NCBI RefSeq assembly: GCF_963676685.1
Contig: NC_092344.1
Location: 46,128,001 to 46,192,000, forward strand
DNA from: Mytilus edulis
Lineage: Eukaryota
Reading direction: 5' to 3'
Length of the DNA stretch: 64,000 nucleotides
The notes under the pieces are model-generated. The model did not search any database, had not been told where the DNA came from, and was given only the letters and a program-made list of their open reading frames with translations. Below are positions 31,087 to 63,821 of this stretch, piece after piece. Positions within the stretch are counted from its first letter, which is position 1, and every line of letters begins with the position of its first letter. The translations under genes were made by a program, and so were the position numbers.

Positions 31087-33751
31087 ACTGGAAACACTAT
31101 AATACATTTCTATATATAACTATATAACGAAAATCATATATTTATTTATAAAGCATATATTTCTATATTATTGGATTATCTGAGTTGCTTTTCCATATAA
31201 AGCAAAGTTTTTTTTTTTTTTTATTTCTAAACAGAAAAAAATGTTCTTTTCCGAATAGTGCCAACTTGGGTAGATGTGGCGATAATTAGGAGTAAAACAG
31301 TGGGAATGCGGGGTAAAGGGGAAGTGGGTGAGGTTCTGTTGAAAGAGGAAGGGGAAAAGTCGGAAATAGTGTTGAAATTACACAAATGTGAAAATTGAGA
31401 AATATTTAGCATGCTGCATCAACGTATAAAGCCCCTCCCCTCCCCCTCAAATTTTTGGAGTCCGTTCCAAAAAAAATCTCACAATTAACTGTTAAATTTT
31501 TTTTTACCTTTATCTTCAAATAAGCGACTTAATCTGCTATTATAATGCCAAAAAAAATGATTCAAACACATTCAAAACGCCAAAATTTATCGGAAACTTA
31601 AAAATTTTGTCTTATGTGTTACTCGTTAAAAATGAAATGCACACTTTATTTAAGGATAAGTGCTTGCAAGTTCGCAGAAAAAGGGTTTAAAGTTTTTTAA
31701 TCATGAATTGAAATATAAGCAAGATGCAGATACTGGTTTATTAATTGTAGCCTGTGTCGATATGAATAAACCATATTTTTATTCTTTATTTTTATATGTA
31801 AATTTCATTTCTTCGAACCTGTCGGAAACAACTCTAACCATAGACTGGGATCCCGCTATATATAATCACCTTGTTCTATATATAGACAGGTGGAGACCAA
31901 CGCCATTTTAGTTCTTTTTTGAACTATTTAATGCGCAACCAGTCGCGCAGGAGATTCCGGATGTTTCATAGGAATTTCCTTATTATGAATACAGCTGAAT
32001 GGAAGAACGTCTGCTACAATAAAGATCGATAAGCGCATTTAAATGGTATTCTCAAAAAATAATTGAATGTATATAACATGTAAAAATATTTATTATAAAT
32101 ATAATTACCAAAACAAAAAGAAAGATCTACCCAAAAAATGAGGATTTAGATATTTTATTTTTATTTTTGGCAATAGCTATTTTTGCAGTACTGTCAGATC
32201 ACAGCCAAAGGAGTTCAAACTACATGTGCACTAATTAAAATTTAACAACTGCTGTGATTTAAGCCGTCAAAATAGCATTTTTCTATAGAAATGGCTATTT
32301 TCATTTATCTGCACCAGCAATGACAGCAATATATGACCCCCCCCCCCCCCATATATATAGACTATAGTGACTTGACTTGTTATTGTGCTGATGGAAAGTT
32401 TAATATCTATGAAAATGTGCAGTCAACATAAAAGAATCAAATACTTACTGATATAACAGTATTAAAATAAGAAAACAGCCAACAATATTTGAAATACATA
32501 TAATTGTTTGAAAATTTTAAACATCTATTGGTCAAAGTGAAAACATTAGTTCACCTCAGTATAAAAGCAACAGGGCATACAAATCTTTGGACCATCACTA
32601 GGATATTTAGTCGGGGAACATTTCTTTACTGAGAATTTAAACAAAATAGAAAAGTACAAAGAAGGGCTGTAAGATTTGTCACAAACCAATACACAGATAC
32701 AAATGTACACCTCAAGCGTTATAGTGACATAAAAAAAAACACACATTGTATGCATGCCTGGTCATGTTTTATAAAATCATATATTATCTCATTGCAATCA
32801 CAACAACAGACTAGTTCACCTGTTAGACAGTCCGGGAACATGCACACACTCTTACTATCAGATTCCATCCAGCAGAACACAAATAAGGCAATAATCATTT
32901 TTTAAATTATAGGCCATATTAATTTAAAGGATAAAAATGAAGATGTGGTATGATTGCCAACTCTCCACAAAAGACCAAATGACTCAGAAATTAACAACTA
33001 ACAAAGAAACAAAACAAAATTACCAATATTTAACAAAAAATAAACAAGTCACAACAAACATTTTCAAATTCAATTTATAAAAGATGACATACATGTAGAC
33101 TCCTTTGTAGAAAGCAGTATAATATCATATATAATATTATAAGTTGTTTTCATCTCTAACAAACTAACAAGGTGATCATTGGACATTTTTTTTCCATCTT
33201 AAATATAATACTGTCTTCTTTAAGATTTCATCAATTTCCCAGCTAGCTACTTTCTTCAATTTTATAAATTTATCTTCGTTATGGTAAACAACATTTTGAC
33301 CTGTGTTTCCCAGTATTTTGATTTAAAGAAATGATGAAACTTTCACCAAAACCAAATAATTGGAACATTCAAGTAAACATAGACTATCCAATACATGTAA
33401 AATGTACTAGTAATCTTCTCTTGGTTAGACAATGTAGAAAGTTTTCTTTTTAACTTATTTTTTTAATTAAGTTATGTCATTAAACTATAGACTGTTCTAA
33501 ACAAAAACAAAATTAAATGTTTTTTTCTGATATCAAATTTAATTCCCTGTACACTAGACAACATAATGGAAATAACTCTATTCATAGCTACCTATTTCTA
33601 CTACTGTGTTGCCTGTATTTATCTCATATTTATTTATATTATATATTTATACGAATTTATTGGTATTTAAACTAGAACAATTAACTCACAAACTTTTTGT
33701 GACTTCATAGGGTTGTAAAAGTGTTGACAGTGCGCACATTTTTAGAATTAA

Positions 33752-34171
33752 GGGTACAAAAATTTCAGCAAAAAATAGCTCCAAATTATCTCCCTTTGGT
33801 GCAAACATGCTACTTTTTGGCATCAAATTTGAAATAACTTTTTTTGATCATCGGTGACCTATATTTTTTTATCATTGTTTTCAAATAAGCTAAACATTAA
33901 CTAAATAATTGTAAAATTAAAGTGATTTCTGTAATTAAGTTCTTTTTTTTATCTCAATAGTACCTCTTTTTCTCCTATTTAGTTCAACAACAACAAAAGT
34001 AGTTTTACACAAATGTATGCTTCTTCCAAAGGCAGATTGTGAGCCTAAATGATAGGTGACCATTCTTTTTTATTTTATTTTTCTATTAGGCATAAGATAA
34101 AGTTCATTTTTAGAAAAATTAGCGAAATCTTATATTAAATTAAAAAAAAAGATTTAGACCTGCGAGCCCCC
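33752..34171. mobile_element. TTAA-flanked Kolobok-like non-autonomous insert nested in a hairpin repeat inside the large transposon
   Basis: TTAA at 33748-33751 and 34172-34175; GGG.../...GAGCCCCC ends; host-repeat arms cttcatagggttgtaaaagtgttgac / gtcaacgcttttacacccaatgaag are split by it. Confidence 0.5.
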
Positions 34172-34373
34172 TTAAGTGCTTTCGCACTTTATACAAAATG
34201 AACTTCCGTCAACGCTTTTACACCCAATGAAGTTTCAAAAAGAAGCATTCCATTCTTGAATAAGGAACTAATTTCTTTTTAAATGCTCAATGGTCATGAC
34301 CGTAATAAATTCAAAGATATTTTTTTGTTACAGATAGAAAGCTAACATCAAGCAGAAAATCGAACAACTATAT

Positions 34374-34638
34374 AGACAAGATGGAACACTATTAAGTTAA
34401 TAGTTACTAGACAGACAAGATGGAACACTATTAAGTTAATAGTTACTAGACAGACAAGATGGAACACTATTAAGTTAATAGTTACTAGACAGACAAGATG
34501 GAACACTATTAAGTTAATAGTTACTAGACAGACAAGATGGAACACTATTAAGTTAATAGTTACTAGACAGACAAGATGGAACACTATTAAGTTAATAGTT
34601 ACTAGACAGACAAGATGGAACACTATTAAGTTAATAAC
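34374..34638. repeat. 39-bp minisatellite, ~6.8 near-identical copies
   Basis: Unit acagacaagatggaacactattaagttaatagttactag; explains the 13-aa repeat of ORF 34348-34674. Confidence 0.95.
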
Positions 34639-35199
34639 ATATATTAAAGTAAGTAAGAATAGTAATGGTCCCAAAATTTAGTCATTTAAGGTGATTTCTG
34701 GATATTATAGTCTTCAAAATAAGAAGATAGTGTATGATTGCTAATGAAAAAAATATCCCCTAAAGACAATGGAACCATCGTAATCATCAACTCATTATAC
34801 TGGAAAATAAATACACACTTCATGTACAAAATATACTAAAGGCTCTTAAGCTTTGCTGGTTCCAATGTAGAATTATTCAGAGCATTTTAGGATATAATTC
34901 ACTACTTAACCATGTTTACAAGATAAAAATAAAAAGTAGTATCATATGTTCTTTGGCACCGTACAAAAATACTATATTTACCGAACAAAGTCACATAAAG
35001 TATTGCAAAAAAAAAAAGGGAACACATAAACTTAGAAAAATACATTTCATTGAAAAACCCCTCTGTAGAGAAATATAATAAATCTCGAAGATTTAGTGGT
35101 GTCTTCTTAATCTATCATGTCTATCTTGGACTGGTTTATTTTTCTTCCTTGTCTGAACCCTCAACTCTCATTAGAAATAGGATACCTAAAACTTTATTC

Positions 35200-36080
35200 A
35201 TCCAGTAGGTCAATAAAGCAAAAAAAATTATTACATTCATAGTATAAGGGAGATAATTCCTATTGATGTAATAAAAATATGTACTAAATTTTATTGGGAC
35301 AATATCAGCCAATCAAATTACGAAAAATTACTCCAGCATTCAGCCAATTTTTATTAGATATTTTTATTTATAGATGTGAAGAGACTTATGCACAAAGCTG
35401 AACAACGAGACAAAAATGAATTATATATGCAGAATTAGAAATAAAACAAAAAGCAAGGTAAGTTCAATTTGTGACACAGTTTGAACGTCAATAATAAAAA
35501 AGGGACATAATAATGTAAGATATTAAAAAAGGTTTTTGTAATTTGACAAAATTGAACCTTTTTGGCTGCAAAAAGCGAATTGTTATTTCACTATTTCACT
35601 TTCATTATTGATTGAACAAAAAAAATCAAACTTTAGATTTTTTATATATCTCGTAGCTAGTGCCCCTTTAAGCAATTGCATGCAACCGTACAGCATTCAA
35701 CTATGAGAAAAATCCATATACTTATTGTCAGCTATAAAAGACTCCAACATAATAAATCCAGTAGGTCTATAAAGCAAAAAAAAAAATTACGTTCATAGTA
35801 AAAGGGAGATAATTCCTATTGATGTAATAAAAATATGTACTGAATTTTATTTGGACAATATCAGCCAATCAAATTGCGAAAAATAACTCCAGCATTCAGC
35901 CAATTTTTATTTATAGATGTGAAGAGACTTATGCACAAAGCTGAACAACGAGACAAAAATGAATTATATAGGCAGAATTAGAAATTAAACAAAAAGCAAG
36001 GTAAGTTCAATTTGTGACACAGTTTGAACGTCAATAATAAAAAAGCGACATAATAATGTAACATATTAAAAAAGTTTTTT
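35200..36080 (+). repeat. ~330-bp local direct duplication (35200-35538 and 35756-36080)
   Basis: Both copies begin atccagtaggtc and contain the same 84-nt AG|...|GTAAGT-bounded segment. Confidence 0.9.
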
Positions 36081-36438
36081 TTATTGATATTGAATTGATA
36101 CTTGGATACACTAACTTGGGATAGACACAACAATGCAGCGGGTTAAAACATGCTTTTTGAGGTCTCAACCCTCCAATACCTCTAGACAATGTAAAAGAAA
36201 CAAATACATAACAATATGCACAATAAAACTCATCGTAGAAAAAAAAGTACATGTATGTGTCATTGCTTGAGTTTAAAAGCTTTATAGGCTGTGGATGGAT
36301 TCTTATGACTACTTTGTAAATTGCATAACTGTTTTAATTTCATGCAATACAGGCTTTTTACAGTTTAAAGGAAAACTGTATTAAACAATGCATACTTTTA
36401 ATCTTTCCTTTTTATAGTTGATTTCTAATACCAAGAGG

Positions 36439-39400
36439 ATGAATGTAGGTCTAGGTACACCTATCAAGCAGAGAGAATGTGATAGAGATTTTTGTTTAGT
36501 GTGTGGGAATTTTGCAAAGGAAGCCCGTAGAGTTGAAACCATCCGGAAGTTAAAAGGGAAAGATTACAGTTTAAAGGACTTATTGAAGAAATATGGTGGA
36601 ATTAATGTTGAAAGTGGAACAGTATGTAGAAAATGCAGTAAAAAAGTTGACTCTCTTCACAAAAAGAATACTGATTTTTACAATGAATGCCAAAAAAATG
36701 CTGGAATGTCAAAACGAATGGCTTCCTCACCACATATAAATCCACCAAAGAGAATAAATATGTCAACACCAAAAACATCTACTCAATATGCCGCAGTTTT
36801 CAGTGACAGTGAAGAAGAAGAAGATGACATTTCCATCATTGGTTTACATTTATCAGATGAAGGTAATTAAGTTAAAATATATGTTTACTTAAACCTGGCA
36901 ACAATGAGTTGGGTGGTGCCCAATGAAACCCTTGCAAAAATGCAGATAATACAGATTCTTTACTATAAAGTTTCTGGGGGACCAGGAACCATTGTAAATA
37001 CATATAAATGTAATTTTGTATACTTATTAATCAATAACTTTAAAAATTTAATAATTAGACACATAAGCTAACAAACATTATAAAAGAATTAAAATACCAT
37101 TTATGGTAGCCACACTATTGTGTTGATTTTAACTTTTGTCCTTGTACATTGAACATATCCTAGGGATCATAATTTCGTAAAAACCACGGTGGCTGAAATA
37201 ATTTTCACACTTTGATGTGTGGTTTCATGTGAATAAATGTAAGTGAAGTGCTATGTATATACATTATTTTTAATTGGAGTTATTTCCCATTGCTCAGAAT
37301 GGGACTAGAATTAATTTTTTTTTTGATAGGTGGCCTAGATTGATGCTTATGTTATGATCTATTTTAATTTATGAGTTATCTAAGTTTGAACAGGAATGGT
37401 TTAATTAATAAGTTTATGGTTAAATACATGTAGTATATCAATGAATGTATCTCTTCAAATGGTTTTAGTCAGAAGTTGTAAAAATATCATTATAACTATT
37501 TTTAAGTTATTTGTCTTTTTAATGTAGAAGTCCCAGTTGATCCTGTTTGATTTTCAAGATTTCCAAATATCATTTTCATGCAGGAATTATCACATTGGCA
37601 CTAATATCGCATCTTCCTATACCTAAATAACAGTTTACAGAACACAAAATGAAAAAAACTAAAGACTAAGCAACACAAACTCAACCAAAAACAGTTGGTG
37701 GTATGAGGTGCTCCAGAAGGGTAAGCAGATACTGCTCCACATGTGGCAGCAGTTGTCTTGTTCAAGTTATTACAAATCGTGCAAATAGTCTAACTGGGTA
37801 AAGTCACATGCATGAAAAGAGAAGGGGTGGTAGTAACTACATAAGGAGCATATATATCTGATGTCATCTGTCAAACTGCTCATCCATAACGGTCAACCAC
37901 CTCGTGACGGTCTCCCTCTAAATGAATTAACAAATTTCTTGGAACATAAGGTTGATATCAGATGTTGTTTAAGGGGGAGCACACTTGAATTGACTTATCT
38001 AAAAATATCAGTTAAAATCTGTTTGACAGTCAAAATGTGTTACACAGTAAAAATCTTATTTTCAAATTTGGTTCGATGAATCAATCTTTTCTATTCTGAA
38101 AATAGATTTTATTATTTGGAACAAATGTGTATACTTTTCTTTATTTTTTCATAACATTTTTATTATAGATACAGAAACAGACCAAGCACATGTATCAGGT
38201 ATCCTATCTTTACAGTCTGCATCATCTTTATCAGGATCATCTTCACATCCATTTTCATTAGATTCATTGACTTCTTCTGCTACATCTGATTCGGCAACAT
38301 CCTTTCAAACAGCTTCTATGACATCTTTGGCTTCATCTAATTCTGTAACATCAAACCAAACAGGTTCATGTTCAACATCTACTGATCACATATATTCCAA
38401 GAATAATGAGAAATCTTCAACCGTAAAATCTAAGGGTAAAGAAGATAAGCAAAGATCAACAATTCCTGCTGCCATAGATCACGATTATATTGTATCTAAG
38501 CCTTCCCCTGTTGTACAAAATGTAATGGTAGATAAAATCATGGATTTTAAAAACAATATAGATATAAATTCAAAAACAGAAATGAAAGAAGCAGACACAG
38601 AAATTCTTATTTCAATCTTGAAAACAAAAAACAAAAGAGAAGTTATCAAACATCTCCTCACAACTGAGGGTTTTAAAGACAGCATCCTGTGCCTTTTGAT
38701 GGAGGAAATAAATTTGATGTCCAATCGTCTAAGAAATAGGAAACTATTTTATGTTAGTGAGTTGATGAAAAAGAGACCAGAGGATTTGAAATTTTTTAAA
38801 TGGAATGAAATTATTTGTGAGTTCATGGTAAAATTTCCAACAGTTTTCAGTTTGATATTGACAATGTTCTTAACGCCACAAGACATGGAGAACAAAGATA
38901 AAATAGAAGCTATTATACCAAGAATAGGAATGGTTTACAGCATGCTAATGCAGGGAAGAAACAAAGAGCTCAGCAGAATTCAGCGAATAACATCACTGTT
39001 TTTGTTTGACAACATATGTGATCAAAAGGTAAATAAATGTTTTATACTATTAATGTACAGAGAATTCATCCTTGATTCCTTTATAATGCAATGGTGATCA
39101 ATCTGGTATTGTTTTTTCTAGGTGTTATACTGGAAATAGTTAAACAAGCAAAAAGGTGGAATATATATCTATGTGTTCAAATAAATTAAAAATTCATGAT
39201 AGCTAATAAGAAAACTCTCCCTAAGAGACCAAAAGCCACAGAAATTAACAACTTTAGGTCAGGATACAGCCTTTAACAATGAGCAATTAATAACAATGTA
39301 TAATGTCGACTCCAATTTTTTATAAATACAAAAAAAAGAAAAGAAAATCATTAATGATGAAAAATCTAGCAATACAATACATCAAATACTTAAAGGGTAC

Positions 39401-42400
39401 TTTGAAGTTTTGAACAACTGTGTGCAGTGCAGTATGGTACCATGTGAGGTATAACTTGAACCAGTAGACTTGTGGTATAATAATACTGTTCAGAAAAAAA
39501 CTAAACTTTTTTTCCTGAAAAGAAGATGGTTTTATTTAGGATAAATGTTACACTTCTGGTTTTAATGTGTTTTCTTTTCAAGTTTAGACAATTCAGAATA
39601 CCTGTGAATACAATTAAACTTCAATACACAGAATACTAATTTGTTTACTCACTTAGTTTGATTTTAAAAGAATTATTATTTTTCAAATATACTTCATATT
39701 AAGGAAGATTCATTTAACTTGCAGGTGTTTGATAGACTTCAGACGGTTGGCGTCTGCCTAAGTTATGAAAGAAGCCTACAAATTGTAGAGATGATTGGAG
39801 GCCATTTCAATGATAAGGTAGTGCAGCTGGTAAAGGACAACACTCGTTTCCGAATTATTGGTGACAACATCAATTGGACTGTTGGTGTTCATGACCAACG
39901 AATTAACAACAAACAGAAAATGATGCATGCTTTTGGTTCAGCAGTGATAGTACAAAACCTGACCTTCACCAATCTAGACAGAGTTGTACCACAACAGCTT
40001 TATAGTCAAACACCAGTTCAAAACTTCATACCATCAGAGGAAGATTACAACCTTATAACAACTGACTACATCATTCTAATGTCAAGGGTTGTTTTTGAAC
40101 ACATTCCATACTTCAAAAAATTTTCAGATATTGTTCCAATTAACATCAGCACACCATGTAGTTCTAATTTGAAAAAAAGTCAGAAGTCATACCATTACCT
40201 GTTCTGTTCAAAAATGAGCAATACTATCAAGATGTCGTAGGGATACTTGACTTCTATGAGAAATGTTTAAAAGATGCGCATGATAAAGCAGGAAAACAAC
40301 TCCATAATCAGACATATCAGATAGGAGGAGACCAGCTGACACGAGAGAGATTCTCAGGAGCAAAGTCACTCAGAGCACACCATCTTAATCCTAGTGACAA
40401 ATTNNNNNNNNNNNNNNNNNNNNNNNNNNNNNNNNNNNNNNNNNNNNNNNNNNNNNNNNNNNNNNNNNNNNNNNNNNNNNNNNNNNNNNNNNNNNNNNNN
40501 NNNAAATGATGCATGCTTTTGGTTCAGCAGTGATAGTACAAAACCTGACCTTCACCAATCTAGACAGAGTTGTACCACAACAGCTTTATAGTCAAACACC
40601 AGTTCAAAACTTCATACCATCAGAGGAAGATTACAACCTTATAACAACTGACTACATCATTCTAATGTCAAGGGTTGTTTTTGAACACATTCCATACTTC
40701 AAAAAATTTTCAGATATTGTTCCAATTAACATCAGCACACCATGTAGTTCTAATTTGAAAAAAAAGTCAGAAGTCATACCATTACCTGTTCTGTTCAAAA
40801 AATGAGCAATACTATCAAGATGTCGTAGGGATACTTGACTTCTATGAGAAATGTTTAAAAGATGCGCATGATAAAGCAGGAAAACAACTCCATAATCAGA
40901 CATATCAGATAGGAGGAGACCAGCTGACACGAGAGAGATTCTCAGGAGCAAAGTCACTCAGAGCACACCATCTTAATCCTAGTGACAAATTCACCCACTT
41001 GAGTCCAATAACTTTTGAACTTTTCCACATGTTGATGTCCTACCTCAAAATGTCATTGAACCTCACATACAAACAAGAAAGTGGTCAGGATATTGGAACC
41101 TTGAAATCACTCCAAGATAGACTTTCCAGAAAAAATATTGGTGACAATGTGAATGATCACTATGAAGCAAATAAAGACTTTTTTATTTCTGTTACTGACA
41201 TGTACATTGTGGAGTGTTTCTTGGAGTTTTTTGGTATGGAAGATAAATATTCAACGCCAACTAAACATGTGCCACCAACCTTTAACACAAATGATGAAAT
41301 GAAGGAATGGTATTTCAGTACTGTGGAGATGATAGTCAAACAACATGTTTTCCTCCAAACTATTACCACAGGTGCAAAACAACAAATGCTGGAAGGTATA
41401 TATATTTATATATATATATGTGTGTGTGAGCATGAAACATTAAATGAACTAAGTTCACTAACCATCATTATAAAATACTGATAAAAGCAACTGTTTGTCC
41501 AAATACACTTGATGTGTACATTACAATTCACCTTGGTCAAATTAAACATATATACTGAATCCTTGATCAGACACACTGACATATAAAGCAGGTTTAGACA
41601 GGCAGCAAGGGTTATATAAATTGGGCGTAAGATTTTAATTTTTACTATAGATGTTTCAATTAACACTGATCAAACTATAAACTAACTTTCAGCATGAATA
41701 AGTAAGAAAACAGATTTGTTTTTTTGATTAATTAATTATGACAGAATTCTAAACTTCAAAATCTGTTCTCATTGTGATTATATACATGAATAATTTAATT
41801 TTGGATGTAACGTGTCTTCTGATTGGCTGACGTTATTTTGTTATTAGCCCATAGACATAATTTAGTCATATGACCGTGACTTCATCAACGTTTTTTCATG
41901 GTTTTCTACGGTGTAAAATGGAATTTAGAATTAAATTATAAGAAATGACTGTAATATTTTTTCTGTCTATTCGAAATAACATATAAAATGTGGTGCACAC
42001 TGTTAAATAACCCGCTACGCGCGTTATTCAGTGTGCACCAAATTTTTTATGTTATTTCTTCATAGACAGAAAAAATAATACAGTCATTCCTTAATTGGAT
42101 AGTAATTTTTATTCAAATTTGATTGTGATATTGATTTAAAAAATATATCTAATTTTGAAAACTAATTCTTTACAGTTGATGGTCAAGTATTCCGGTTGGT
42201 TTTGGCGAATGGGAAAACCATCACACTCATGAAAAAAACAATATCAAAGTCAAAGAAAGGTGATCAGATTAGTAATTATGGAAATCAAATACTCCAACTA
42301 GGATTGTTATTTAAAGATTTGATAGATATGATACATATGCCAGAAAGAGTAAGAGGGCTACGTTTGTTGAAACTTGCAATGATGTATTTTAAAATCTATA

Positions 42401-42912
42401 ATAATCTATCTAAGTATGCCTTAGAAATACTCAGACTCCTGGTACATCAGTTATGTACTTTGTCTGAGAGAGGCTCCAATGAGGAGTTCTACGCCATGTT
42501 TGTGAATACAGGAGGAAAATTTGAAACACATATACCTGCTGATCGAAGAATGGAGTACCTTGTCAAAGAAGTGAAACAACATGTTAAGCATATGTACTCC
42601 AACAAAACAGAAGAGAATATTTCAAACCGTACCAGGGCAATATCTGGAATTCGTGAAATTTCAGTGAATTTTGACCAACAGTCAGGGGTAATTATACGCT
42701 CAAAAAAACATTCCGACAAATCATCTAAGGAAGATGAACTGGCTATTTTATCAGATTTACGAGATATTAGACCATTTCATTGTCAACCTGGTAGGAAACA
42801 TTCATGTTTTGGAGAAATGTCATCATCTGTTGTTCAAAACCTTGATGTGGACCATTATCACAATTGGATCAATACCAGAAAAGTTAAATTTGCTTTGGAA
42901 AATGGGAACTAA
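36439..42912 (+). CDS. Academ-type (DUF6589-like) DDE transposase with N-terminal C4 zinc finger, 4 coding exons, ~1034 aa after correcting the gap overlap
   Basis: Exons 36439-36862, 38169-39028, 39725-41395 (minus the duplicated overlap), 42176-42912; GT-AG, phases 1/0/1, 3105 nt; CLVC..CRKC finger; motifs IIGDNINW, IGGDQLTRER, ELFHML, IPADRRMEYLVK. Confidence 0.85.
37640..37920 (-). repeat. Fragment of a Penelope-associated 3' repeat in transposase intron 1
   Basis: ggtgctccagaagggtaagcagatactgctccac is the reverse complement of the gagcagtatctgcttacccttctggagcacc block I recall from bivalve PLE-derived repeats. Confidence 0.45.
40404..40503. other. 100-N scaffold gap flanked by an artefactual overlap (39918-40403 repeated as 40504-40991)
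   Basis: The two copies appear identical apart from two A-homopolymer length differences. Confidence 0.93.
41770..42093. repeat. Interspersed hairpin-containing repeat (MITE-like); inverted related copy at ~48716-48980
   Basis: tggtgcacactg..cagtgtgcacca hairpin with flanking atgactgtaatattttttctgtctat / atagacagaaaaaataatacagtcat. Confidence 0.6.
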
Positions 42913-43499
42913 ACATTGACATAATCAAATGACTATTAATAGTCTGTAATTTGCCAGGTCCAATTTGTTTTTTTGTAACTTGTTTTCTTTGGATTGATCT
43001 GAAGATTGAAGATATTTCATCAGATTTTTGTAGATTGTTGTTATGATGTATTTGATAATTACACGATTTTCCCTGGTTGGGTGAAGGGTTTGACACCTTC
43101 AAACTAGTTAAACCCAACCATAGTCTGTTGTTGTTGGTTGATCTAATATTTGTATTTTTTTTAATTTTTTTATATGAAATAGAGCACTTAGTTTTCTAAA
43201 AAAAAAATCTCACTTTTTTCAAGTGGGACCTTTTATAGCTGACTATAGGTTTATCTCATTGTTAAAGGCTATACTTATTTGATTGCTTACATTTAATTCT
43301 TTTGAACTTTGGTCATGAGAGTTGTCTCATTGGCAATCTTACCACATCTCCATATTTTTATGACAGTTCTTCTTAATTAAAACTACTATATAGCTTTTAT
43401 CCAATCAATCATTTTTTCTTCAAATATATTCCACCTGTGGTTTGTATTGATATTTGATATGTAAAGGTCATAAAGTTTTTTTTTTAAACCTGGTTAATG

Positions 43500-45548: not shown

Positions 45549-48500
45549 TTAATTTAATTTTTGTACAATGAGTAAAATGTTACTCAAATAATGCTGCTTT
45601 AGGTGAACATAAGGAAATAAGCCCTGGATGTCCTCTTCACATTTAATGTCTTTGTAGTTCAAAACAATTTTGTCACACAAAGTTTGGGTCAATCCTGTCA
45701 CAAGTTGTTGGTTTAACATGTTTATTTGATCATTTTCTGCATTGAAATAAGATTCTAGCATTTCCTTTAATTGTGTACAATCAGGTTCATCAGCACATTG
45801 ACAATTATCTATGACGTCACACTTTTCCACTTCACTTACAAGACAATGATCACATTCACACTCTTTTTCACATACATCACAGCAGTTATGCTTAAGTATT
45901 GAATCTAAATCAACCTTTGTCTCAAAATACTGGCTTAGAAACTTTCTTCTGCATGTTTTTAGGAGGCAGAATTCTCTCACTTCTGGTTGTACAATTGTGT
46001 TGGTGGCAATATCACTCATATTGTAATGCATATATGCACTGCTTTGTCGACCATCTCTACCAGCTCTACCAATTTCTTGTAGATAACCTAAACGAGTAAA
46101 CAATAATTGTTTTTGTTAAATCATTTCCTTTCATTTTTCAAATTTTTGGTTCTGACATTCATGAAAAAAACGAAACAATATTACATATTTCAAATCTTAG
46201 AACTGCAATTTTTTTCTAAGAACTAGGGGTTCAATTAGTCATAGTGAAATGTTTTTTTTTTCATTTTCTGTTAAAGTCTCATGTTTTTTTGCATGTTGGT
46301 GTATCAGCATATGAAAATGTGACCAACATACAGCATTGGCTTTTGATCTCAAGGTGAAAATATGGATTTTTGTATTGTAAATACTTGTGACCTATGACTT
46401 TTCATCTTTTTTTACAAAGTGTTATGATATTTGGAATATCACAAAAGGATGAAGTGTATGATTTTTAGGCGTCTATGTATATATATATATATAGTTACAA
46501 TTATTGGCCTTTCACTTGTTGTAAAATATGAAAGTCTTTGTGAAAATTAATTAATATATGCATAATCCAGAACTTTTCTATTTAGATAAATTTATTTATA
46601 TTTATAAATATGCAATTGTGTAATATATATGTATTAGACGGCAGTCAAATTTTTTAAGGTGCTTATGATCCAATTCTTGCAATTTAAATATTATAAACTG
46701 TTAACATAAATAGTTAGTTTTATGTTTCCATATGTAGATGGGAGATAACTACCCTTATATTTTATCAGTTGAGTCTGCTTTTTATGCAGCTCTGAACACC
46801 ATGGTTCTGTTGGTATTAATAGACACAGTCTAAAGGGGAATAATCCTTACATATGATACTGATTGTCTCCCATATCAATTATGTATTCAGTGTTTTATAA
46901 TGTTGTATTTTATTATATTATTATTTCATTGTTATCATATTGTATGAAATTTTGAAACCCTAATAACCTTTAGTGTAATACGTTATATAGCCTTAATACT
47001 TGCATTCCAAAGAACTTGGTGGTCCAATGTGGCAAACCCTTTCCACATCTGGGGCATCAGTGCCCATACCATAAGCTTGAGTGGCAAAAAGCAACTTTAT
47101 GGATCCATGTGTGTCTGCCATGTTCTGTGCTATATTTTTTTTCATCTAGAATTATACAATTTATTTCAAATGCAAATGATTTATAATGATTTCATTTTTC
47201 TTTATACATGTAAAATACTGTTTCATTCAATTCGTTGTTTATTGTTTAATACTAATGAAATATGTTGAATAAAGTGGACATGGACATTAATGTTCTGTAA
47301 CAATTAAACTGTTTTTTTTTGAATCCATGTACAAAGATGAATAAGGGTTCTGTCCATGGCCAAATATTAAAATTAAATCAAAGTCAAAAGCACTAAATGC
47401 ATGAGCGTTATGAGTATATGACCGCATTAAGTTAAAATGAAAATTCATAATATAAGTAGTAACCAATGGATGTCACTGTCATAATTTGTTGGACAATATT
47501 AGTGATGGGCACATCTAATGATTGGTTTATTTTTCAACTCTTAAAAAAAATATTTCTGAAATATGCTTATTTCTTGTAAACCATATTATGAAATTAAAAG
47601 AAAAATCTTCTACCTTAAGAATGGAAGTATTATTTATTACAAAAATATGTACAAAAACATCAGACCAAAATGAAAATAGAAAAAATATTTGTACTCCTGT
47701 GGAGTCAGTATACCAGATTTGAATCCATTCCTTTTTTTGAAAGTTTGCCTGGAGTTTGCTTGTCTATGTTTGATTTCTTAGTAGATTATAAAAGGAATGC
47801 TTTATCAATATTTAAAATAACCTCATCTGTGCAAGGTGCATGGAACTGTGACACTGCTGAAAGTATTTCATCGGTATTGTCTTCCAGGCGGGCTGCCTGT
47901 GACACCATGTCATAGCCTACTCCACACCATTTCAGTTTTGAATAAACAATAGTTTTGGGAACATTCCAGATCTGACTACAAAGTTCCTCAATATATGGGT
48001 TTAACACATCTTGATATGAACCTTCTGCTGTTGTTTTACCTCCAGTGAGAGGTAAACGTTTTTGAACTATAAGTTTGATGTTTGGTCTATCAACTGGACC
48101 TGATAGGGAAAACACATCTTTCATACAAAGTTGTTGTTGTATCTCTTTCCTCATTTTCGGTGTTGCTGTTGCTGTAAGTGCTAGGATTTTTGCCTGTGGC
48201 AATATTGCACGTAATTTTGAAATGTTTCTGAAATCTGGACGAAAATCGTGTCCCCATTGAACTACACAATGAGCCTCGTCTACTACAATGTGTGACACAT
48301 TTTCCCAACTCTTCTGCTTAAAAATGGTGCAAACTTCTTTTTTTAGAATTTGTTCAGGGTGGCCAAAAATGTACTCAAATTTACCATCCTTGAAATCTGC
48401 TGCCTCTGGTCCTGAAATATAAAAATTAAACCTTTTTGGTACATAAACACCATTTATTTTTAGACTTTGATTAATAATAAGATTAATATGTATTTACAGA

Positions 48501-50052
48501 TTTAATGTAAAAATATTATTAACAGTTTAATTCTTTAGAAACAGATGCATGAATGTAAGGTAATGTATTGCCCACAGGATTCATTTGACATTGGTCTCAT
48601 TTCATGTTTCTATTTCTATAACTAGCTGCAATCAATATTCTATATATGAAATGATTGTGAAGTGTACATGTATTTCCATCTTGGTTATCTGACATTAAAA
48701 TTTTGGTTTATTTTATTTAGGGAATTTTATGACTGTAACATTTTTTCGGTCTATGAAGAAATGTTATAAAAAAAGGTGCTGCACACTGAATAACCTGTAT
48801 ATGTGTTATACTAAAGTGTGCACCACATTTTTTATTGTTATTTGTCCATAATTTTATTCTAATTTTGAAAAGGTTGATGACGTCACAGTCACATTTCAAA
48901 ATTATGTCTACATGTATGAGCTGATAGACAAAACACTGTCAGCTAATCATAAGACTTGTTACATCCAAAATAAAATTTTGGTTTAATACTTGTATTTAAA
49001 TTTTTAATTTATGAATATCATTGCATAAAACATTTGGTTTGAAAAGCAGGAAAGACAGTTCAGCATGTGCAATTTTGTTTTAATAAATGATTGAAGACAA
49101 GTATTTTAACATGAAATATAAAATTAAACTTATCAATTTTTGGTTATATAAAGCAATAAGCACATCAACGGTTCCTGGTCCCCCAGATTATATCAAGAAT
49201 CTGTATTATCTGCCATAATGGCAGGGGTATCATTGGGCACCACCCAACTCATTGTTGCCAGGTTAAATGTGTCATGCAACAGTACTTGAACTTATTATAC
49301 ATAAGATGTAGTAAGAGGTCCAATGAGGCAACTATCAATACAAGTCACTAGCCTATTTTAAAAAGTATTGCCGAAACATTTTTCTGCAAAGTGTAGCGAG
49401 GCTAAAAATAATAAACGAAGGAATCATGCTTTCTGAGTGTTTCCCAGACCCTGTCTTAATCTGAAAGCTTGAATGTGTTCTGTTTCAAAATTGTTTATAT
49501 TTTGGACTCAAAGCAAAATGTATAGAATCTGTGTAAGACTTTAGTTTCTAGGGACAACATCTAAAGAAAAATATTTAGGATAAAGCAAAAATGTAATTCA
49601 CATAGTTCAGCATGTGGCCACTGGGTTTTCCTTTTTTTTTTGTGTGTGTGACTGTTTCAGCTTGCATAATTTTAATCTTTTATACCTGTAAATTATTAAA
49701 AAAAAATTCAAATAAGTCAAGAGGGGCTGAATATCATTGATATAACTATGTCAAGTAAGTTTTTATAACACATTTCAATTACAATTTGATGTAGCTCCTA
49801 TAAACTTGGATACAATTTTTAGTAGTTGAAAAGTTGTAATTTTATATTAGCTATATAATATAAAACTAAAAGGTATGCAAAAAAGAATCCAGGATCAGGT
49901 GTTTAGTGTTTGTAAGCTCATGATTATGGGATTGACCCTTTCAGGATAAAGGAATTCTTTTTTCAAAATTTCATGATTATGATTTGTTTTGATTTTGGAC
50001 TTCAGGATTTCATGTTTTTTAAGTCCAGGATTTGGGGATCACAACCCCTCCT

Positions 50053-50087
<35 letters not shown>

Positions 50088-53000
50088 TTTCCCTTCAATG
50101 CAGACATTTCAATTGTATCTAATTAATATTTATTCTTTTTTAAATAAAAGATATGGGAATTTTTTGCAGATTTTTTTTTTAAAAAGATGAATATTATAAA
50201 TAATCTGGTGCCCTCTCAAAGTATCAAACTATGAATAGCATTTATGAAATGGCTTAAAAGACCTGCTGAGTTATTTATTTTCAATAGTAAAACATTGCAA
50301 GTCAGATTAGTTTTTACAAATTACCACAGAACAAACCATTTATTTTTGTGATCATCAAGGCAGCCCCATGTTAGGGGAGGGGGATTCTGCCAACATGTTT
50401 AACTCAACACATTATATATGTATTTGCCTGTCCCAAGTCAGGAGCCTGTAATTCAGTGGTTGTCGTTTGTTTGTGTTACATATTAGATTTTCATTCATTT
50501 TTTTATACAAATAATGTAAGGCCGTTAGTTTTCTTGTTTTGAATAATTTTACATTGTCATATAGGGGCCTTTTATAGGTGACTATGCAGTATGGGCTTTG
50601 CTCATTGTTGAAGGCTGTATGGTGACCTATAGTTGTTAATGTCTGTGTCATTTTGGTCTCTTTTGGATAGTTGTCTCATTGGCAATCAATTACCACATCT
50701 TCTTTTTTAGTTATTTATTTCACCCCCCACCATGAAATGGTTGTTCCCTTACACAACATATTTTCTGTTGAAGAACAAATAAATATACATTTATAAATAT
50801 AATTTGTTCTTCTTCTTCTTCTTCTTTATAATTCAGCACTCCATCAACATACTGATGATAACGTGCCGGGCACTGATTTTACTATGCCGCGCGTGCGTGG
50901 GATATACATTTTATTTACAGTGAAAAATACAAAAATAAAAATAAAAATTTCAACATTTATAACTTCTTTTTCTTCTGTTTTTGTACTATACATTTTGGTT
51001 AAAACTATATACATTGTAGAATTTATTTAAATGTTAAGATGTTTATTGAGAACAGATATTGGAATCTGTTCTCGGAAGCTTTCAAGAGTAGTACATTGAA
51101 CTGCAGCTACTGGGAGAAGGTTCCATTGCAAGATGGTTCTAGGGTAGAATGAATACTTGTATGAGTCTTTAGTGGTTTGTATGGGTCTGAAAGAGTAAAT
51201 ATGTGAATGTTGTCGTGTTCTTGTATCAGATTGTGTAAGTAGGTCTGTCGGATATATGGCAACAAGATGATGTATAATTTTGTAGAGGAAAATGATGCGG
51301 GTTCTAATTCGCCTTTTCTCAAGTGTTGCCCAATTTAGAGTTTGTAGCATTTCAGTGACTGAGCTGGTGTTATGGTATCTGTTGCAGGTGTACCTTGCTG
51401 CTCTGCGCTGGACCATCTCAAGTTGGTGTGTTTGAGATTTGGTGTGCGGGTCCCAGACGCAGCTGCTGTATTCTAGCTTTGGTCTTACTAGTGCAATGTA
51501 TGCTTTTTCTTTGACTGTTTTTGAGTTGACTTTTAGATTCCTTTTAATAAAGTTCAGCTTTTGTGTGGCTGCAGCTGTGATATTGTTTACATGTTTGTTC
51601 CATTTGAGATCAGTTTGTATAGTTATTCCCAGATATTTTGTGGATGTTTCTTTTTGAAGTACATGTTGGTGGAGAGTATAGTCAAAATTTAATGGGTTTT
51701 TCTTAGTTGTTATCTGAAGGACTGAGCACTTGTCTGGATGGAATGACATGAGCCAGTCCTTCTCCCATTTTGCAGCTGATGTGAGATCTTCTTGCAGTTT
51801 TTGTGTGTCTTCTTTGTTTCGTATTGTTTTATAAATTATGCTATCATCTGCAAATAATCTGAGGGTACTGTGTTTGATGTATTCGTTAAAGTCGTTTATG
51901 TATACAAGGAAAAGGATCGGACCCAAAACTGTTCCTTGGGGAACACCAGATGTTACATTTATTTTGTCTGACTGAACACCATCAATGATCACTGTTTGTG
52001 TCCGAGATGTGAGAAAATCTTCTATCCATTTTAAGGTGTTGTCATCAATGCCATAATGTTTTAGTTTGTAGAGGAGTCTTTTGTGAGGAACTTTGTCAAA
52101 GGCTTTGGCAAAGTCCATCACAATTATGTCCGTTTGGATGTTACTGTTGTTATTTTTTGCTAGTTCTTGGATGAAGGATACTAGTTGGGTTTCGCATGAT
52201 CTATTTGCTCGAAATCCGTGTTGAAGGTCGTACAAAATATTGTTATTTTCTAGGTGGTCCATCATACTACTGGCTATTATGTGTTCCATGATCTTACAAA
52301 GTATGCATGTGAGAGATATGGGTCTATAATTTATTGCGTTGTGTTTATCACCTTTTTTAAAAACAGGACAGACATTTGCATGTTTCCAATCTTTTGGGAT
52401 TTTTCCTGTGTCGAGTGATTTTTGGAAGATGTAGGTGATTGCGGTTGAAATGTCACTACTAAGTTCTTTGAGTACTGTTCCGCAAATTTGATCTGGACCA
52501 GTTGCTTTGTTAGGATTGATCTTGTCCAGTAATTTTATGACACCTTTCTTAGAGATGGTGATCTTGTTCATTTTTGGATAGTTCGATTTTCCTTTATCCG
52601 GAATGGGTTCACTTGTTGTTTCTTCGGAAAATGCTTTTTGAAACTGACTATTTAGAATGTTAGTTTTGTCAGATGTATTGTCAGTAAGTTTACCATCTTT
52701 TCTAAGTGCAGCAATGCCTGTATTGTCATTTTTCATACTTTTTATGTATGTAAACAAGTTCTTAGGTTGTTTTTTCCTGATGTTGTCATCTGGTTCATCT
52801 ACTGGTAGGTCAAATATCATTTTTTCAATGTTATTCCAGTAGGCATTACGCATTTCTTTTTGTAATGTTCTTTTTAAGTATTTGTATTTTTTCATTTGCT
52901 CTGGACTGTTTTTGCTCTTTTTATGTAGTCTTTTAACTTTGTTTATCATGATTTTTAATGTTTTATCAACCCAGGGTAGTTTTTTCTTGTTTGTGATTGT

Positions 53001-53723
53001 TTTCTGGGGGATGTTTTTCTTGACTGATTGAAGTAGTCTTTCTGTAAATGTATTCCATAGTTCGTCAGTAGATGAACTATGGTAATGACCTTTGATTTCT
53101 TGTGTGAGTTTGTTCACATCTTGTTTGATGTTTTCCAAGTTAGCTTTTCTGTACTGCAACATGTTTAATATTCTGCAAAACTGGAACACAATTTAAATAT
53201 AATATCATTTATTTATATCTATTGGTATTTATAACAATAATATCAAACATATATCTGTATGAATATTTTTGGTGTCTCTGTTTATCTGTTTCATACTTGA
53301 GTTTCCCTAAAATTAAAAAGTGTCTCAATGACACTGCAGTCAAGAATGGAATGAATGAATATTACAAATACCTTCAAGACTATTTATTAGCGCTGAATTA
53401 ACATTAACAGCCTTTCTACCCAGCTTTCTTGTCTGCTCTTCAATAATGGCATTTAAGGGGCTGATTATTATGCATTTGGTGTTATTCATTTTTCCAAGCA
53501 TTTCAAAAATTAATGACTTCCCATAGCCAGTGGGTAGCATGATCAACGCATCACTTTTCATTGCACCTTGAATACTTTGCAATTGCAAAGGTTTCAAGTA
53601 GGTTAAATTAACGTTTCGCGTACAGTTGATCTTAGTTAAGGCAATTTTATGTATCAAGACATTCTTAAGTTTTTCTTTAAAATCTTTCACATCGTCTGCT
53701 GCCATATTGTTTATTGTTGTCAT
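45549..53723 (-). CDS. Transposon-encoded RecQ-like SF2 DNA helicase, 4 exons, 540 aa
   Basis: Exons 53723-53372, 48411-47822, 47145-47004, 46087-45549 (1623 nt); motifs LKPLQ, LPTGYGKS, ISPLNA, GHPE, VVDEAHCVVQWGHDFRPDF, ALTATA, FHA, ATQAYGMGTD, HIGPP, YLQEIGRAGRDG, and the Zn-binding CRR..CCDVC. Confidence 0.9.
50809..53155 (-). mobile_element. 5'-truncated CR1/L2-clade LINE in helicase intron 1
   Basis: Uninterrupted RT frame, ~200-nt 3' UTR, (AAG)n tail at ~50809-50826; endonuclease domain missing; no clear TSD. Confidence 0.85.
51027..53189 (-). CDS. Non-LTR retrotransposon ORF2 reverse transcriptase (N-truncated), 720-aa open frame
   Basis: KATGPDQI, NYRPISLT, QHGFR..RSC, DFAKAFDKV, GVPQGTVLGP, LFADD, KYLGI, RPKLEY. 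Confidence 0.9.
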   Translation of the reverse strand: MFQFCRILNMLQYRKANLENIKQDVNKLTQEIKGHYHSSSTDELWNTFTERLLQSVKKNIPQKTITNKKKLPWVDKTLKIMINKVKRLHKKSKNSPEQMKKYKYLKRTLQKEMRNAYWNNIEKMIFDLPVDEPDDNIRKKQPKNLFTYIKSMKNDNTGIAALRKDGKLTDNTSDKTNILNSQFQKAFSEETTSEPIPDKGKSNYPKMNKITISKKGVIKLLDKINPNKATGPDQICGTVLKELSSDISTAITYIFQKSLDTGKIPKDWKHANVCPVFKKGDKHNAINYRPISLTCILCKIMEHIIASSMMDHLENNNILYDLQHGFRANRSCETQLVSFIQELAKNNNSNIQTDIIVMDFAKAFDKVPHKRLLYKLKHYGIDDNTLKWIEDFLTSRTQTVIIDGVQSDKINVTSGVPQGTVLGPILFLVYINDFNEYIKHSTLRLFADDSIIYKTIRNKEDTQKLQEDLTSAAKWEKDWLMSFHPDKCSVLQITTKKNPLNFDYTLHQHVLQKETSTKYLGITIQTDLKWNKHVNNITAAATQKLNFIKRNLKVNSKTVKEKAYIALVRPKLEYSSCVWDPHTKSQTHQLEMVQRRAARYTCNRYHNTSSVTEMLQTLNWATLEKRRIRTRIIFLYKIIHHLVAIYPTDLLTQSDTRTRQHSHIYSFRPIQTTKDSYKYSFYPRTILQWNLLPVAAVQCTTLESFREQIPISVLNKHLNI

Positions 53724-54123
53724 TTACAAATGCATGCCGGGAGAAAACACCGGCTTTCCTATTTTGATGACGTCAATATTTTTAAATTTAGAACAACCTC
53801 GATTTCAAATAAAAAGATGGCGTTATACCCTACCTGTCTTGATATATGAAATATGTAATATGCACATTGATCTAGACAGGCGAACCAGTCTACTCTAACC
53901 AATCAAAAATTTGTTTGATTAAATTCATACGCACTGACAAGTGTGAAAACATTGGAAATAAACATTTTGGAAAAAAATATTAATACATGTTTAATTTATG
54001 CTAGTCCCTTTAAAGTTTTTATTTTATATGCTAAATTATGGTTGTGGAAAAACATTCGTTCATTTTGGTACATTAAAAGATACTTTAATTAGAACTACAT
54101 TGTACTTCCCATATTTAGAATAA

Positions 54124-63821
<9,698 letters not shown>

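What the first reader, a model, noticed from the sequence alone, without database searches (positions are those of the whole stretch)
31832..53901. Complete ~22-kb two-gene DNA transposon: DUF6589-like transposase plus RecQ helicase, with an exact 9-bp TSD
Seen in the sequence: CTCTAACCA|TAGACTGG...CCAGTCTA|CTCTAACCA, so the fragmentary ORFs from 36.4 to 53.7 kb belong to one mobile unit. They splice into two convergent genes (~1034 aa and 540 aa) with consistent exon phases. Established: TAG ends, 9-10-bp TSDs and a transposase plus RecQ-like helicase in opposite orientation define the AcademH lineage, so the class is described rather than new. The role of the helicase is, to my knowledge, unexplained, and such genes are easily mis-annotated as host RecQ and DUF genes. 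Inference: a perfect TSD and two open frames make this a candidate autonomous, recently mobile family.
Basis: partly seen in the sequence, partly recalled or inferred. Interest (0 to 1): 0.9.

Follow-up and report, generated by a model that had tools for sequence, protein, structure and literature searches.

The report
Mussel AcademH-type transposon copy, recently mobile
This is a real and recently active two-gene DNA transposon (a cutting enzyme plus a RecQ-like helicase) in a mussel genome. It belongs to an already described class, and this copy is inflated by an assembly artefact and two later insertions.

Summary
An 8-bp terminal inverted repeat (TAGACTGG / CCAGTCTA) flanked by the exact 9-bp repeat CTCTAACCA bounds 31841-53892.

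That signature alone is expected about 0.6 times per window by chance. Other copies decide the matter. The 1.37-Gb Mytilus genome holds 47 left and 47 right ends (reversed control 0). These include three other long copies and many 84-146-bp miniature copies, each with its own 9-10-bp duplication. Homology to other copies stops exactly at the termini.

The transposase has 4 exons and 1034 aa; a homologue folds as an RNase H-like DDE enzyme. The RecQ-like helicase has 4 exons and 540 aa, with all motifs intact.

- The gap at 40404-40503 sits between two redundant copies (486/488 bp) of one sequence, an unmerged contig overlap. Each version carries one homopolymer frameshift, so the transposase frame is not demonstrably open.
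- The largest ORF (51027-53189) is the reverse transcriptase of a nested, 5'-truncated LINE in helicase intron 1. It is absent from sister copies.

Verdict: a new member of a known kind (AcademH; Academ is known to be expanded in bivalves). Interest is modest. The scan has no record of this family on other DNA.

The parts
31832..31840 (.). Left target-site duplication, CTCTAACCA
   Evidence: Identical to 53893-53901.
31841..31950 (+). Left terminus: the 8-bp TIR TAGACTGG (31841-31848) and a subterminal TAGACAGG motif at 31883
   Evidence: Homology to copy C12 starts exactly at 31841. The first 44 bp are retained in the miniature copies.
34328..34678 (.). 39-bp tandem repeat array in the non-coding left arm
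   Evidence: D1. The left arm 31841-36210 is the most variable part between copies, about 87% identical to C12.
35190..36103 (.). Tandem duplication of about 550 bp (92-93% identical) in the left arm
   Evidence: D4, D5.
36439..36862 (+). Transposase exon 1 (ATG start, ZAD-like zinc finger; ends in phase 1, donor GTAATT)
38169..39028 (+). Transposase exon 2 (no Pfam domain; helical in the homologue's model)
   Evidence: The exon 2/3 junction is identical to that of the M. edulis gene model P0001.
39725..41395 (+). Transposase exon 3 (first part of DUF6589, with the GDN and GGDQ catalytic candidates). In this assembly it is interrupted by the gap and its duplicated flanks
   Evidence: It is one continuous 1084-nt exon in paralogues C12, C14 and C4.
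39918..40991 (.). Assembly artefact: 39918-40403 and 40504-40991 are redundant copies of one sequence on either side of the 100-N gap (40404-40503). They differ only by 1 nt at each of two A-runs (about 40172-40178 and 40210-40214 in the left copy, about 40758-40765 and 40797-40802 in the right copy)
   Evidence: The segment occurs once in each of three paralogues. Both window versions share a private substitution.
41790..42093 (.). Copy-specific insertion of about 300 bp with internal inverted repeats (MITE-like), in transposase intron 3
   Evidence: (I3, I4, I6, I11, I12). Absent from copy C14. A related sequence lies inverted at 48729-48977.
42176..42912 (+). Transposase exon 4 (second part of DUF6589, with the D-x3-E catalytic candidate; includes the stop codon)
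45549..46087 (-). Helicase exon 4 (motif VI QEIGRAGRDG, Cys-rich zinc subdomain, stop codon)
47004..47145 (-). Helicase exon 3 (Helicase_C, motif V). It is followed by a GC-AG intron with donor GCAAGT
   Evidence: The same junction position is used in the M. californianus RefSeq model of a paralogous family (P0157).
47822..48411 (-). Helicase exon 2 (DEAH motif II, motif III, start of the second RecA-like domain)
   Evidence: (RECQ1, BLM, WRN and RecQ at E down to 6.5e-20).
50813..53157 (-). Nested 5'-truncated non-LTR retrotransposon fragment with an RVT_1 reverse-transcriptase ORF and a (GAA)n tail. It lies in helicase intron 1, on the same strand as the helicase
   Evidence: It is absent from copies C12 and C4, which show the empty site.
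53372..53723 (-). Helicase exon 1 (ATG start, Walker A PTGYGKS; ends in phase 1, donor GTATTT)
53773..53892 (+). Right terminus: the TIR CCAGTCTA (53885-53892), preceded by TAGACAGG at 53873, which forms a near-palindrome with the terminal 8-mer
   Evidence: Homology to C12 and C4 ends exactly at 53892. The last 54 bp are retained in the miniature copies.
53893..53901 (.). Right target-site duplication, CTCTAACCA

Best explanation
Window 31841-53892 is one copy of a low-copy, recently mobile cut-and-paste DNA transposon family of a Mytilus genome. Its architecture is that described for AcademH.

Shown:
- Short TIRs, with repeated TAGACWGG motifs near both ends.
- 9-10-bp target-site duplications.
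- A 4-exon gene for a transposase of about 1034 aa with a DUF6589 core. A full-length, colinear homologue of this core folds as an RNase H-like DDE enzyme, most like the P-element and hAT transposases. The candidate catalytic residues D, D and E are present in the window.
- A convergent 4-exon gene for a 540-aa RecQ-family helicase with intact motifs.

Inferred:
- The transposase binds the terminal and subterminal motifs, excises the element, and joins it to a target cut with a 9-bp stagger.
- The helicase acts as an element-encoded accessory factor in excision, target joining or repair.
- The 84-146-bp miniature copies, made of the left ~44 and right ~54 bp, are mobilised in trans. The cis requirements therefore lie within about 100 bp.

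This particular copy has both termini and a perfect TSD, but it is not pristine. It contains an unmerged contig overlap with a gap, a nested LINE fragment in helicase intron 1, and a nested insertion of about 300 bp in transposase intron 3. Whether its transposase frame is open cannot be decided from the assembly.
For: - Termini and TSD.
- Boundaries of homology with C12, C14 and C4 fall exactly at the termini.
- 47 left and 47 right ends in the genome, reversed control 0.
- About 20 copies with different 9-10-bp TSDs, including C12 (18.8 kb), C4 (9.4 kb, internally deleted) and miniature copies.
- Substitution divergence from the window copy is 0.21% (C4), 1.13% (C12) and 1.17% (C14).
- Pfam DUF6589, DEAD and Helicase_C on the exons.
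- All PDB sequence hits for the helicase exons are RecQ-family.
- Exon models of 3105 nt (1034 aa) and 1623 nt (540 aa) have canonical splice sites, apart from one GC-AG intron. They agree with public Mytilus gene models and with a 980-aa Saccoglossus homologue that is colinear end to end.
- D, D and E columns are conserved in 44/45, 50/51 and 30/33 sequences.
- 12 further diverged DUF6589 + RecQ-like pairs lie within 10 kb in this genome, and all 12 are convergent. Their identities to this copy covary (Spearman 0.85).
- The literature states that AcademH makes 9-10-bp TSDs and encodes a helicase (PMC10045372), and that Academ is expanded in bivalves (PMC10294476).
Against: - No Repbase Academ/AcademH reference sequence was available, and the defining paper (Kojima 2020) is not held. 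Assignment of the transposase to the Academ superfamily therefore rests on architecture, TSD length and circumstantial links, not on a direct sequence comparison.
Splicing and expression are inferred.
- In the assembly as written, both versions of transposase exon 3 are frameshifted by 1 nt at a homopolymer.
- No empty allele of this insertion was found in the assembly.
- The role of the helicase is inference only.
Confidence: 0.85

Rival explanations
1. The family is real, but this copy is dead. The homopolymer frameshift in transposase exon 3 is genuine, or the sense-oriented LINE in helicase intron 1 truncates the helicase transcript, or both. Any recent movement was then driven in trans by another copy (C12 is the only other copy with all exons open) or by none that is still present.
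For: -: the left version has A7/A5 and the right version A8/A6. All three paralogues keep the in-frame total length (A8/A5 in C4 and C14; C12 is in frame with a C-to-A change at the second run).
- the LINE and the ~300-bp insertion are specific to this copy.
- C14 and C4 carry frameshifts, stop codons or deletions. Decay is therefore common in this family.
Against: - The two window versions each disagree with the paralogues at a different run, within about 300 nt of a contig end. This pattern fits sequencing error rather than mutation.
- All other exon sequence is open.
- Both nested insertions lie in introns.
- The TSD is perfect, and divergence from C4 is only 0.21%.
Confidence: 0.4
2. It is a helicase-encoding member of another DDE superfamily rather than AcademH. 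Candidates are the Kolobok lineages that carry RecQ helicases, or a lineage related to the P element.
For: - PMC9587614 reports that KolobokH, and one Kolobok family with a RecQ helicase on the complementary strand, exist.
- The best structural match of the transposase homologue is the P-element transposase.
Against: - The TSDs are 9-10 bp with varied sequence. I recall, without having checked it here, that Kolobok makes a 4-bp TTAA duplication.
- No THAP or P-element Pfam domain was found. The core matches DUF6589 only.
- The 9-10-bp TSD plus a helicase is the stated AcademH signature.
Confidence: 0.06
3. It is not a transposon. A host RecQ paralogue and a host DUF6589 gene happen to lie between chance repeats.
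For: - The 17-nt end signature alone is expected about 0.6 times per window.
- Public annotations name these genes recQ and DUF6589 domain-containing protein.
Against: - Multiple copies at unrelated loci share exact boundaries and have different TSDs.
- There are 47 + 47 ends in the genome against 0 for the controls.
- Miniature copies exist.
- The flank of this insertion is unique in the genome.
Confidence: 0.01

Closest known systems
AcademH lineage of the Academ superfamily (Kojima 2020, Mob DNA 11:15; paper not held, features taken from PMC10045372 and PMC10799480)
   Same: 9-10-bp TSDs; a DDE transposase plus an SF2 (DEAD/Helicase_C) helicase encoded in one TIR-bounded element; found in animals; low copy number.
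   Different: Nothing contradictory was found. The family itself, with its termini and its ~98-bp miniature derivatives in Mytilus, is not named in any paper I could read. Direct sequence comparison with Repbase AcademH was not possible.
AcademX lineage (transposase with XPG nuclease)
   Same: Presumed to share the transposase superfamily.
   Different: AcademX makes 3-4-bp TSDs and carries an XPG nuclease instead of a helicase. Here the TSDs are 9-10 bp, and no XPG domain was found in any ORF.
KolobokH and Kolobok-1_CCri (Kolobok elements with RecQ helicase; PMC9587614)
   Same: A DDE transposon that carries a RecQ-like helicase; in one case the helicase is on the complementary strand.
   Different: [quoted passage not shown] Here the TSDs are 9-10 bp and the transposase core is DUF6589.
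Drosophila P-element transposase and Hermes (hAT) transposase (PDB 6p5a, 8edg)
   Different: Sequence identity is only 7-10%. There is no THAP, GTP-binding or hAT dimerisation Pfam domain. TSD length differs (both make 8 bp, from my own knowledge), and neither encodes a helicase.
Cellular RecQ helicases (RECQ1, BLM, WRN, E. coli RecQ)
   Same: All seven helicase motifs are present, including the DEAH box with the following QWGHDFRP motif and QEIGRAGRDG, plus a Cys-rich zinc subdomain. PDB E-values reach 6.5e-20 on a single exon.
   Different: The gene is only 540 aa. No RQC winged-helix or HRDC Pfam match was found. It is multi-copy, lies inside a transposon, and is paired with a transposase at 12 other loci.

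Membership tests
AcademH | Target-site duplications of 9 or 10 bp | tested here: met
   This copy has a 9-bp TSD. About 20 other copies have different 9-bp TSDs, and a few read as 10 bp, at about the rate expected from a chance match of the next base. The feature is as stated in PMC10045372.
AcademH | A helicase gene (DEAD + Helicase_C) encoded inside the element in addition to the transposase | tested here: met
   Pfam and PDB hits on the four minus-strand exons. Intact 540-aa model. The gene lies within the TIR-bounded unit in all long copies.
AcademH | Transposase belongs to the Academ superfamily by sequence, that is, it clusters with Repbase Academ DDE cores | not testable with these tools
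   No Repbase or Yuan & Wessler Academ sequences are available here.

Indirect support:
- The core is DUF6589, with an RNase H-like DDE fold in a homologue.
- Academ is abundant in bivalves.
- In fungi Academ is most abundant in rusts, where DUF6589 is reported to be enriched.
AcademH | No XPG nuclease (this separates it from AcademX) | tested here: met
   No XPG Pfam hit in any exon or other ORF of the element, or in full-length homologues.
   Both features are present here, and the convergent orientation holds in 12 of 12 diverged pairs in this genome. Whether they are defining for AcademH could not be checked, because the paper is not held. The termini of two diverged families could not be located.
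Autonomous (self-sufficient) copy | Both termini intact and both ORFs open | tested here: inconclusive
   The termini, the TSD and the helicase ORF are intact. The transposase is open except between two A-runs, where each assembly version is off by 1 nt. No reads were available to resolve this.
Kolobok (including KolobokH) | 4-bp TTAA target-site duplication (feature recalled from my own knowledge) | tested here: not met
   TSDs are 9-10 bp with varied sequence.
Host single-copy RecQ orthologue | Single-copy gene outside mobile DNA | tested here: not met
   Near-identical copies lie on C1, C12, C14 and C4, always inside the element. Diverged copies are paired with transposases elsewhere.

The most novel reading that the evidence does not exclude
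The family may still be active in living Mytilus. Copies differ by as little as 0.2%, TSDs are perfect, and ~98-bp miniature derivatives define minimal ends. It could then serve as a tractable system for asking why a DDE transposase needs its own RecQ-like helicase, for example for the long 9-bp staggered integration or for repair of the donor site. A second possibility concerns the ~80-nt motif found in the first intron of both genes, sense to each. It is restricted to this family, plus one weak hit near a diverged family, and could be a shared cis-regulatory or RNA element that couples expression of the two genes.
Probability: 0.15. Interest if true: 0.55.

Novelty: new member of a known kind. 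Interest (0 to 1): 0.3.

Why it matters
The element gives a well-delimited AcademH-type family, with exact ends, TSD statistics, minimal derivatives and gene models, in a commercially and ecologically important mussel. It also documents that public annotations label its genes as 'recQ' and 'DUF6589 domain-containing protein'. Such labels can mislead gene-family counts and functional speculation. The biological open point, what the helicase does in transposition, is not resolved here. The family would be a reasonable substrate for testing it.

Tried and rejected
The M. edulis copy could not be compared in its genomic context.
- **The AcademH paper** (Kojima 2020) is not held, by DOI or by PMC id.
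- **Bivalve TE paper supplements** contain no mention of AcademH, helicase or DUF6589.
- **Foldseek against the PDB** with the full 980-aa model gave no hit at E <= 0.001. The top weak hits were transposases. The VIA wide search gave the usable result.
- **Empty site.** The 400-bp left flank is unique in the assembly, so there is no haplotig with an empty allele.
- **Termini of two diverged families** (C2:75.17-75.20 Mb and C13:1.31-1.33 Mb): an exact TIR + TSD scan found nothing convincing.
- **Third gene or XPG nuclease** in the non-coding arms: no Pfam hits.
- **Joined spliced proteins.** Exons were searched one by one by reference, and spliced lengths and frames were computed only in scripts.
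- **The N stretch.** I did not fill it or look it up. I only compared the sequence on both sides of it with each other and with the paralogues.
- **Complex prediction** for transposase and helicase was not run. I do not claim that the two proteins bind.
Full report
**1. Observation**

At the stated coordinates the sequence reads ctctaacca | TAGACTGG... (31832-31848) and ...CCAGTCTA | ctctaacca (53885-53901). This gives an 8-bp perfect terminal inverted repeat flanked by an exact 9-bp direct repeat, spanning 22,052 bp.

Beyond the 8-mer the two ends share only patchy similarity. The repeated motif TAGACWGG occurs six times in the window, and four of these lie within 52 bp of the two ends.

The 17-nt signature is not significant alone. 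The window holds two such pairs, against a mean of 0.6 in shuffles, and the second pair is AT-rich low complexity. The observation therefore needed outside support.

**2. Other copies settle the matter**

The window is C1:46128001-46192000 of a 1.37-Gb assembly. The best protein matches are Mytilus proteins, so the genome is a Mytilus species.

The two 200-bp ends recur elsewhere in the genome. The 20-nt left and right ends each occur 47 times at up to one mismatch, and the reversed controls occur 0 times.

Three other long copies exist:
- C12:73501809-73520579 is 18.8 kb.
- A copy on C14 of about 32.8 kb lacks the first 22 bp of the left end.
- C4:41604345-41613802 is 9.4 kb and internally deleted.

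blastn homology with these copies begins exactly at 31841 and ends exactly at 53892.

Many copies are 84-146 bp long and consist of roughly the left 44 and right 54 bp. One copy is 416 bp and one is about 2 kb.

Each copy has its own 9-10-bp duplication. Examples are tgaaaaaga, tataacatg, acagacttg, cgaattttg, ctatttatt, gacgtgggc, tacctgatc, tatattgca, ctgacagca (C4) and ggggtgaatg (C12). About a quarter read as 10 bp, which is near the chance rate for one extra matching base.

Substitution divergence from the window copy is 0.21% for C4, 1.13% for C12 and 1.17% for C14.

The left flank of this insertion is unique in the assembly, so the assembly holds no empty allele.

**3. The assembly gap (tested first, as asked)**

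The 100 N at 40404-40503 are flanked by 39918-40403 and 40504-40991, which are the same sequence. The two versions differ only by one A at each of two homopolymer runs. They share a private substitution that sets them apart from all paralogues.

In C12, C14 and C4 the segment occurs once. The blocks left and right of the gap map onto overlapping coordinates in those copies.

I read this as an unmerged contig overlap, not missing sequence. I neither filled nor looked up any N. Collapsing the overlap makes the element about 21.47 kb.

The segment lies inside transposase exon 3. In the three paralogues that exon is one continuous 1084-nt stretch, in frame.

In the window the left version has A7/A5 at the two runs and the right version has A8/A6. 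C4 and C14 have A8/A5, and C12 is in frame with a C-to-A change. Each window version is therefore off by 1 nt, at a different run, within about 300 nt of a contig end.

Everything upstream of the first run and downstream of the second run is open in a single frame. Sequencing error at contig ends is the simplest reading, but without reads it is unproven.

**4. Genes**

*Transposase, plus strand.* The exons are 36439-36862, 38169-39028, 39725-41395 (collapsed) and 42176-42912, with GT-AG introns and phases 1/0/1.

- The exon 2/3 and 3/4 junctions coincide with the M. edulis gene models P0001 and P0015.
- A 980-aa Saccoglossus protein (P0005) is colinear from residue 9 to its last residue.
- Pfam finds DUF6589 on exons 3-4 and a weak zf-AD on exon 1.
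- phmmer with exon 3 of the C12 copy finds 1304 homologues.
- Full-length homologues carry DUF6589 and nothing else.

An AlphaFold model of P0005, built with 55 aligned sequences, has mean pLDDT 81. Foldseek gave only weak hits.

The candidate catalytic columns are conserved in 44/45, 50/51 and 30/33 sequences. In the window they appear as GDN, GGDQ and D-x3-E.

*Helicase, minus strand.* The exons are 53723-53372, 48411-47822, 47145-47004 and 46087-45549.

- Intron 3 uses a GC-AG donor (GCAAGT). The RefSeq model of a paralogous family in M. californianus places its junction at the same position.
- All PDB sequence hits are RecQ-family: RECQ1, BLM, WRN, RecQ and RECQ5.
- Walker A, DEAH, motifs III, V and VI, and a Cys-rich zinc subdomain are present.

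The joined proteins were not sent to any search tool.

**5. What does not belong to the unit**

The longest ORF in the interval (51027-53189, minus strand, 720 aa) is a reverse transcriptase: RVT_1 at 3.8e-35. It belongs to a 2,345-bp, 5'-truncated non-LTR retrotransposon fragment with a (GAA)n tail at 50813-53157. C12 and C4 show the uninterrupted site there. The fragment sits in helicase intron 1 on the same strand as the helicase. That intron is 4,960 nt long.

A MITE-like insertion of about 300 bp at 41790-42093, in transposase intron 3, is absent from C14.

Without these insertions and the artefact the element would be about 18.8 kb, the size of C12.

No other ORF in the element has a Pfam domain, and there is no XPG nuclease.

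**6. State of the copies**

- C12 has every exon open.
- C14 has frameshifts in transposase exon 3 and helicase exon 2, large nested insertions, and a missing left terminus.
- C4 lacks the transposase N-terminal exons and exon 4, and has a stop codon in helicase exon 2.
- Only C12, and possibly this copy, can be autonomous.

**7. Is the helicase a host gene?**

No. It lies inside the element in all long copies.

Searches of the whole genome with transposase exon 4 and helicase exon 2 find 12 further loci where diverged versions lie within 10 kb of each other (25-57% and 32-52% amino-acid identity to this copy). All 12 are in convergent orientation. The two identities covary, with Spearman 0.85 for n = 12. 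This figure is descriptive, because the points are not independent.

Public annotations name these genes 'recQ [Mytilus edulis]' (P0165, 96-100% identical to the window's exons), 'putative ATP-dependent DNA helicase Q1', and 'DUF6589 domain-containing protein'. One preprint speculates that DUF6589 is a virulence factor in rust fungi.

**8. Mechanism**

Shown: the ends, the TSDs, the gene content, the fold of a homologue, and derivatives made only of the ends.

Inferred: this is DDE cut-and-paste transposition with a 9-bp staggered target cut. The transposase recognises the terminal and subterminal TAGACWGG motifs, possibly through the N-terminal zinc finger. Internally deleted and miniature derivatives are mobilised in trans. 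The helicase acts as an accessory factor.

PMC10045372 relays the view that the difference in TSD length between AcademH (9-10 bp) and AcademX (3-4 bp) relates to the helicase versus the nuclease.

**9. Comparison with the known**

The 9-10-bp TSD plus an SF2 helicase is the published AcademH signature.

Academ is known to be expanded in bivalves, with 100 curated consensus elements (PMC10294476).

Kolobok lineages with RecQ helicases exist (PMC9587614) but do not fit the TSDs found here.

I could not compare the transposase directly with Repbase Academ sequences. Membership in the superfamily by sequence therefore remains untested. The paper that defines AcademH is not held.

**10. Verdict**

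The element is real, recently mobile and well delimited, and it belongs to a described class: a new member of a known kind.

Three corrections apply:
- The gap is an assembly artefact, and it leaves the transposase frame formally unresolved.
- The largest ORF belongs to a nested LINE.
- The interest was overstated.

Noticed in passing
window 50813-53157 (-): A 5'-truncated non-LTR retrotransposon fragment with a 720-aa RVT_1 reading frame and a (GAA)n tail. The empty site is visible in sister copies C12 and C4, with about 4 bp of target lost.
   Followed up: partly
window 54160-54453 and 59399-59746 (+): ORFs with a JmjN domain (7e-18) and an ARID domain (4.5e-11), consistent with a KDM5/JARID1-type gene. 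Its first coding ORF begins about 270 bp from the transposon's right end, so the element sits in that gene's upstream region.
   Followed up: partly
window 36889-36960 and 49195-49267: An 80-100-nt motif lies in the first intron of both element genes, inverted relative to each other and therefore sense to each gene. Genome-wide it is found only in copies of this family, plus one weaker hit (79% over 76 nt) at C11:24064719-24064792. That hit is 1.3 kb from a diverged DUF6589 hit.
   Followed up: partly
window 41790-42093 and 48729-48977: A MITE-like sequence with internal inverted repeats is present twice in inverted orientation. The first copy is specific to this element copy. The second is shared by all long copies.
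   Followed up: partly
C4:41604345-41604410 (L022): The internally deleted C4 copy has a tandem duplication of its terminal 46 bp, which gives it two right ends. The 9-bp TSD (ctgacagca) pairs the left end with the outer right end.
   Followed up: partly
C3:17774803-17811844: Four left ends and two right ends of this family cluster within 37 kb. This may be nested or rearranged copies.
   Followed up: no
window 4814-6457 (-): A 547-aa intronless ORF with B-box and NHL-repeat Pfam hits (TRIM-like).
   Followed up: no
window 39197-39286, 50598-50688, 32959-32999, 43316-43349: Several fragments of one short interspersed repeat, sharing the core GTCTCATTGGCAAT, are scattered through the element's introns and non-coding arm in both orientations.
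   Followed up: no
window 44228-44434 (+): A 69-aa open stretch between the two genes looks by eye like the C-terminal part of a LINE reverse transcriptase. It has no Pfam hit. The stretch is shared by C12 and C14, and most of it (up to 44395) is deleted in C4.
   Followed up: no
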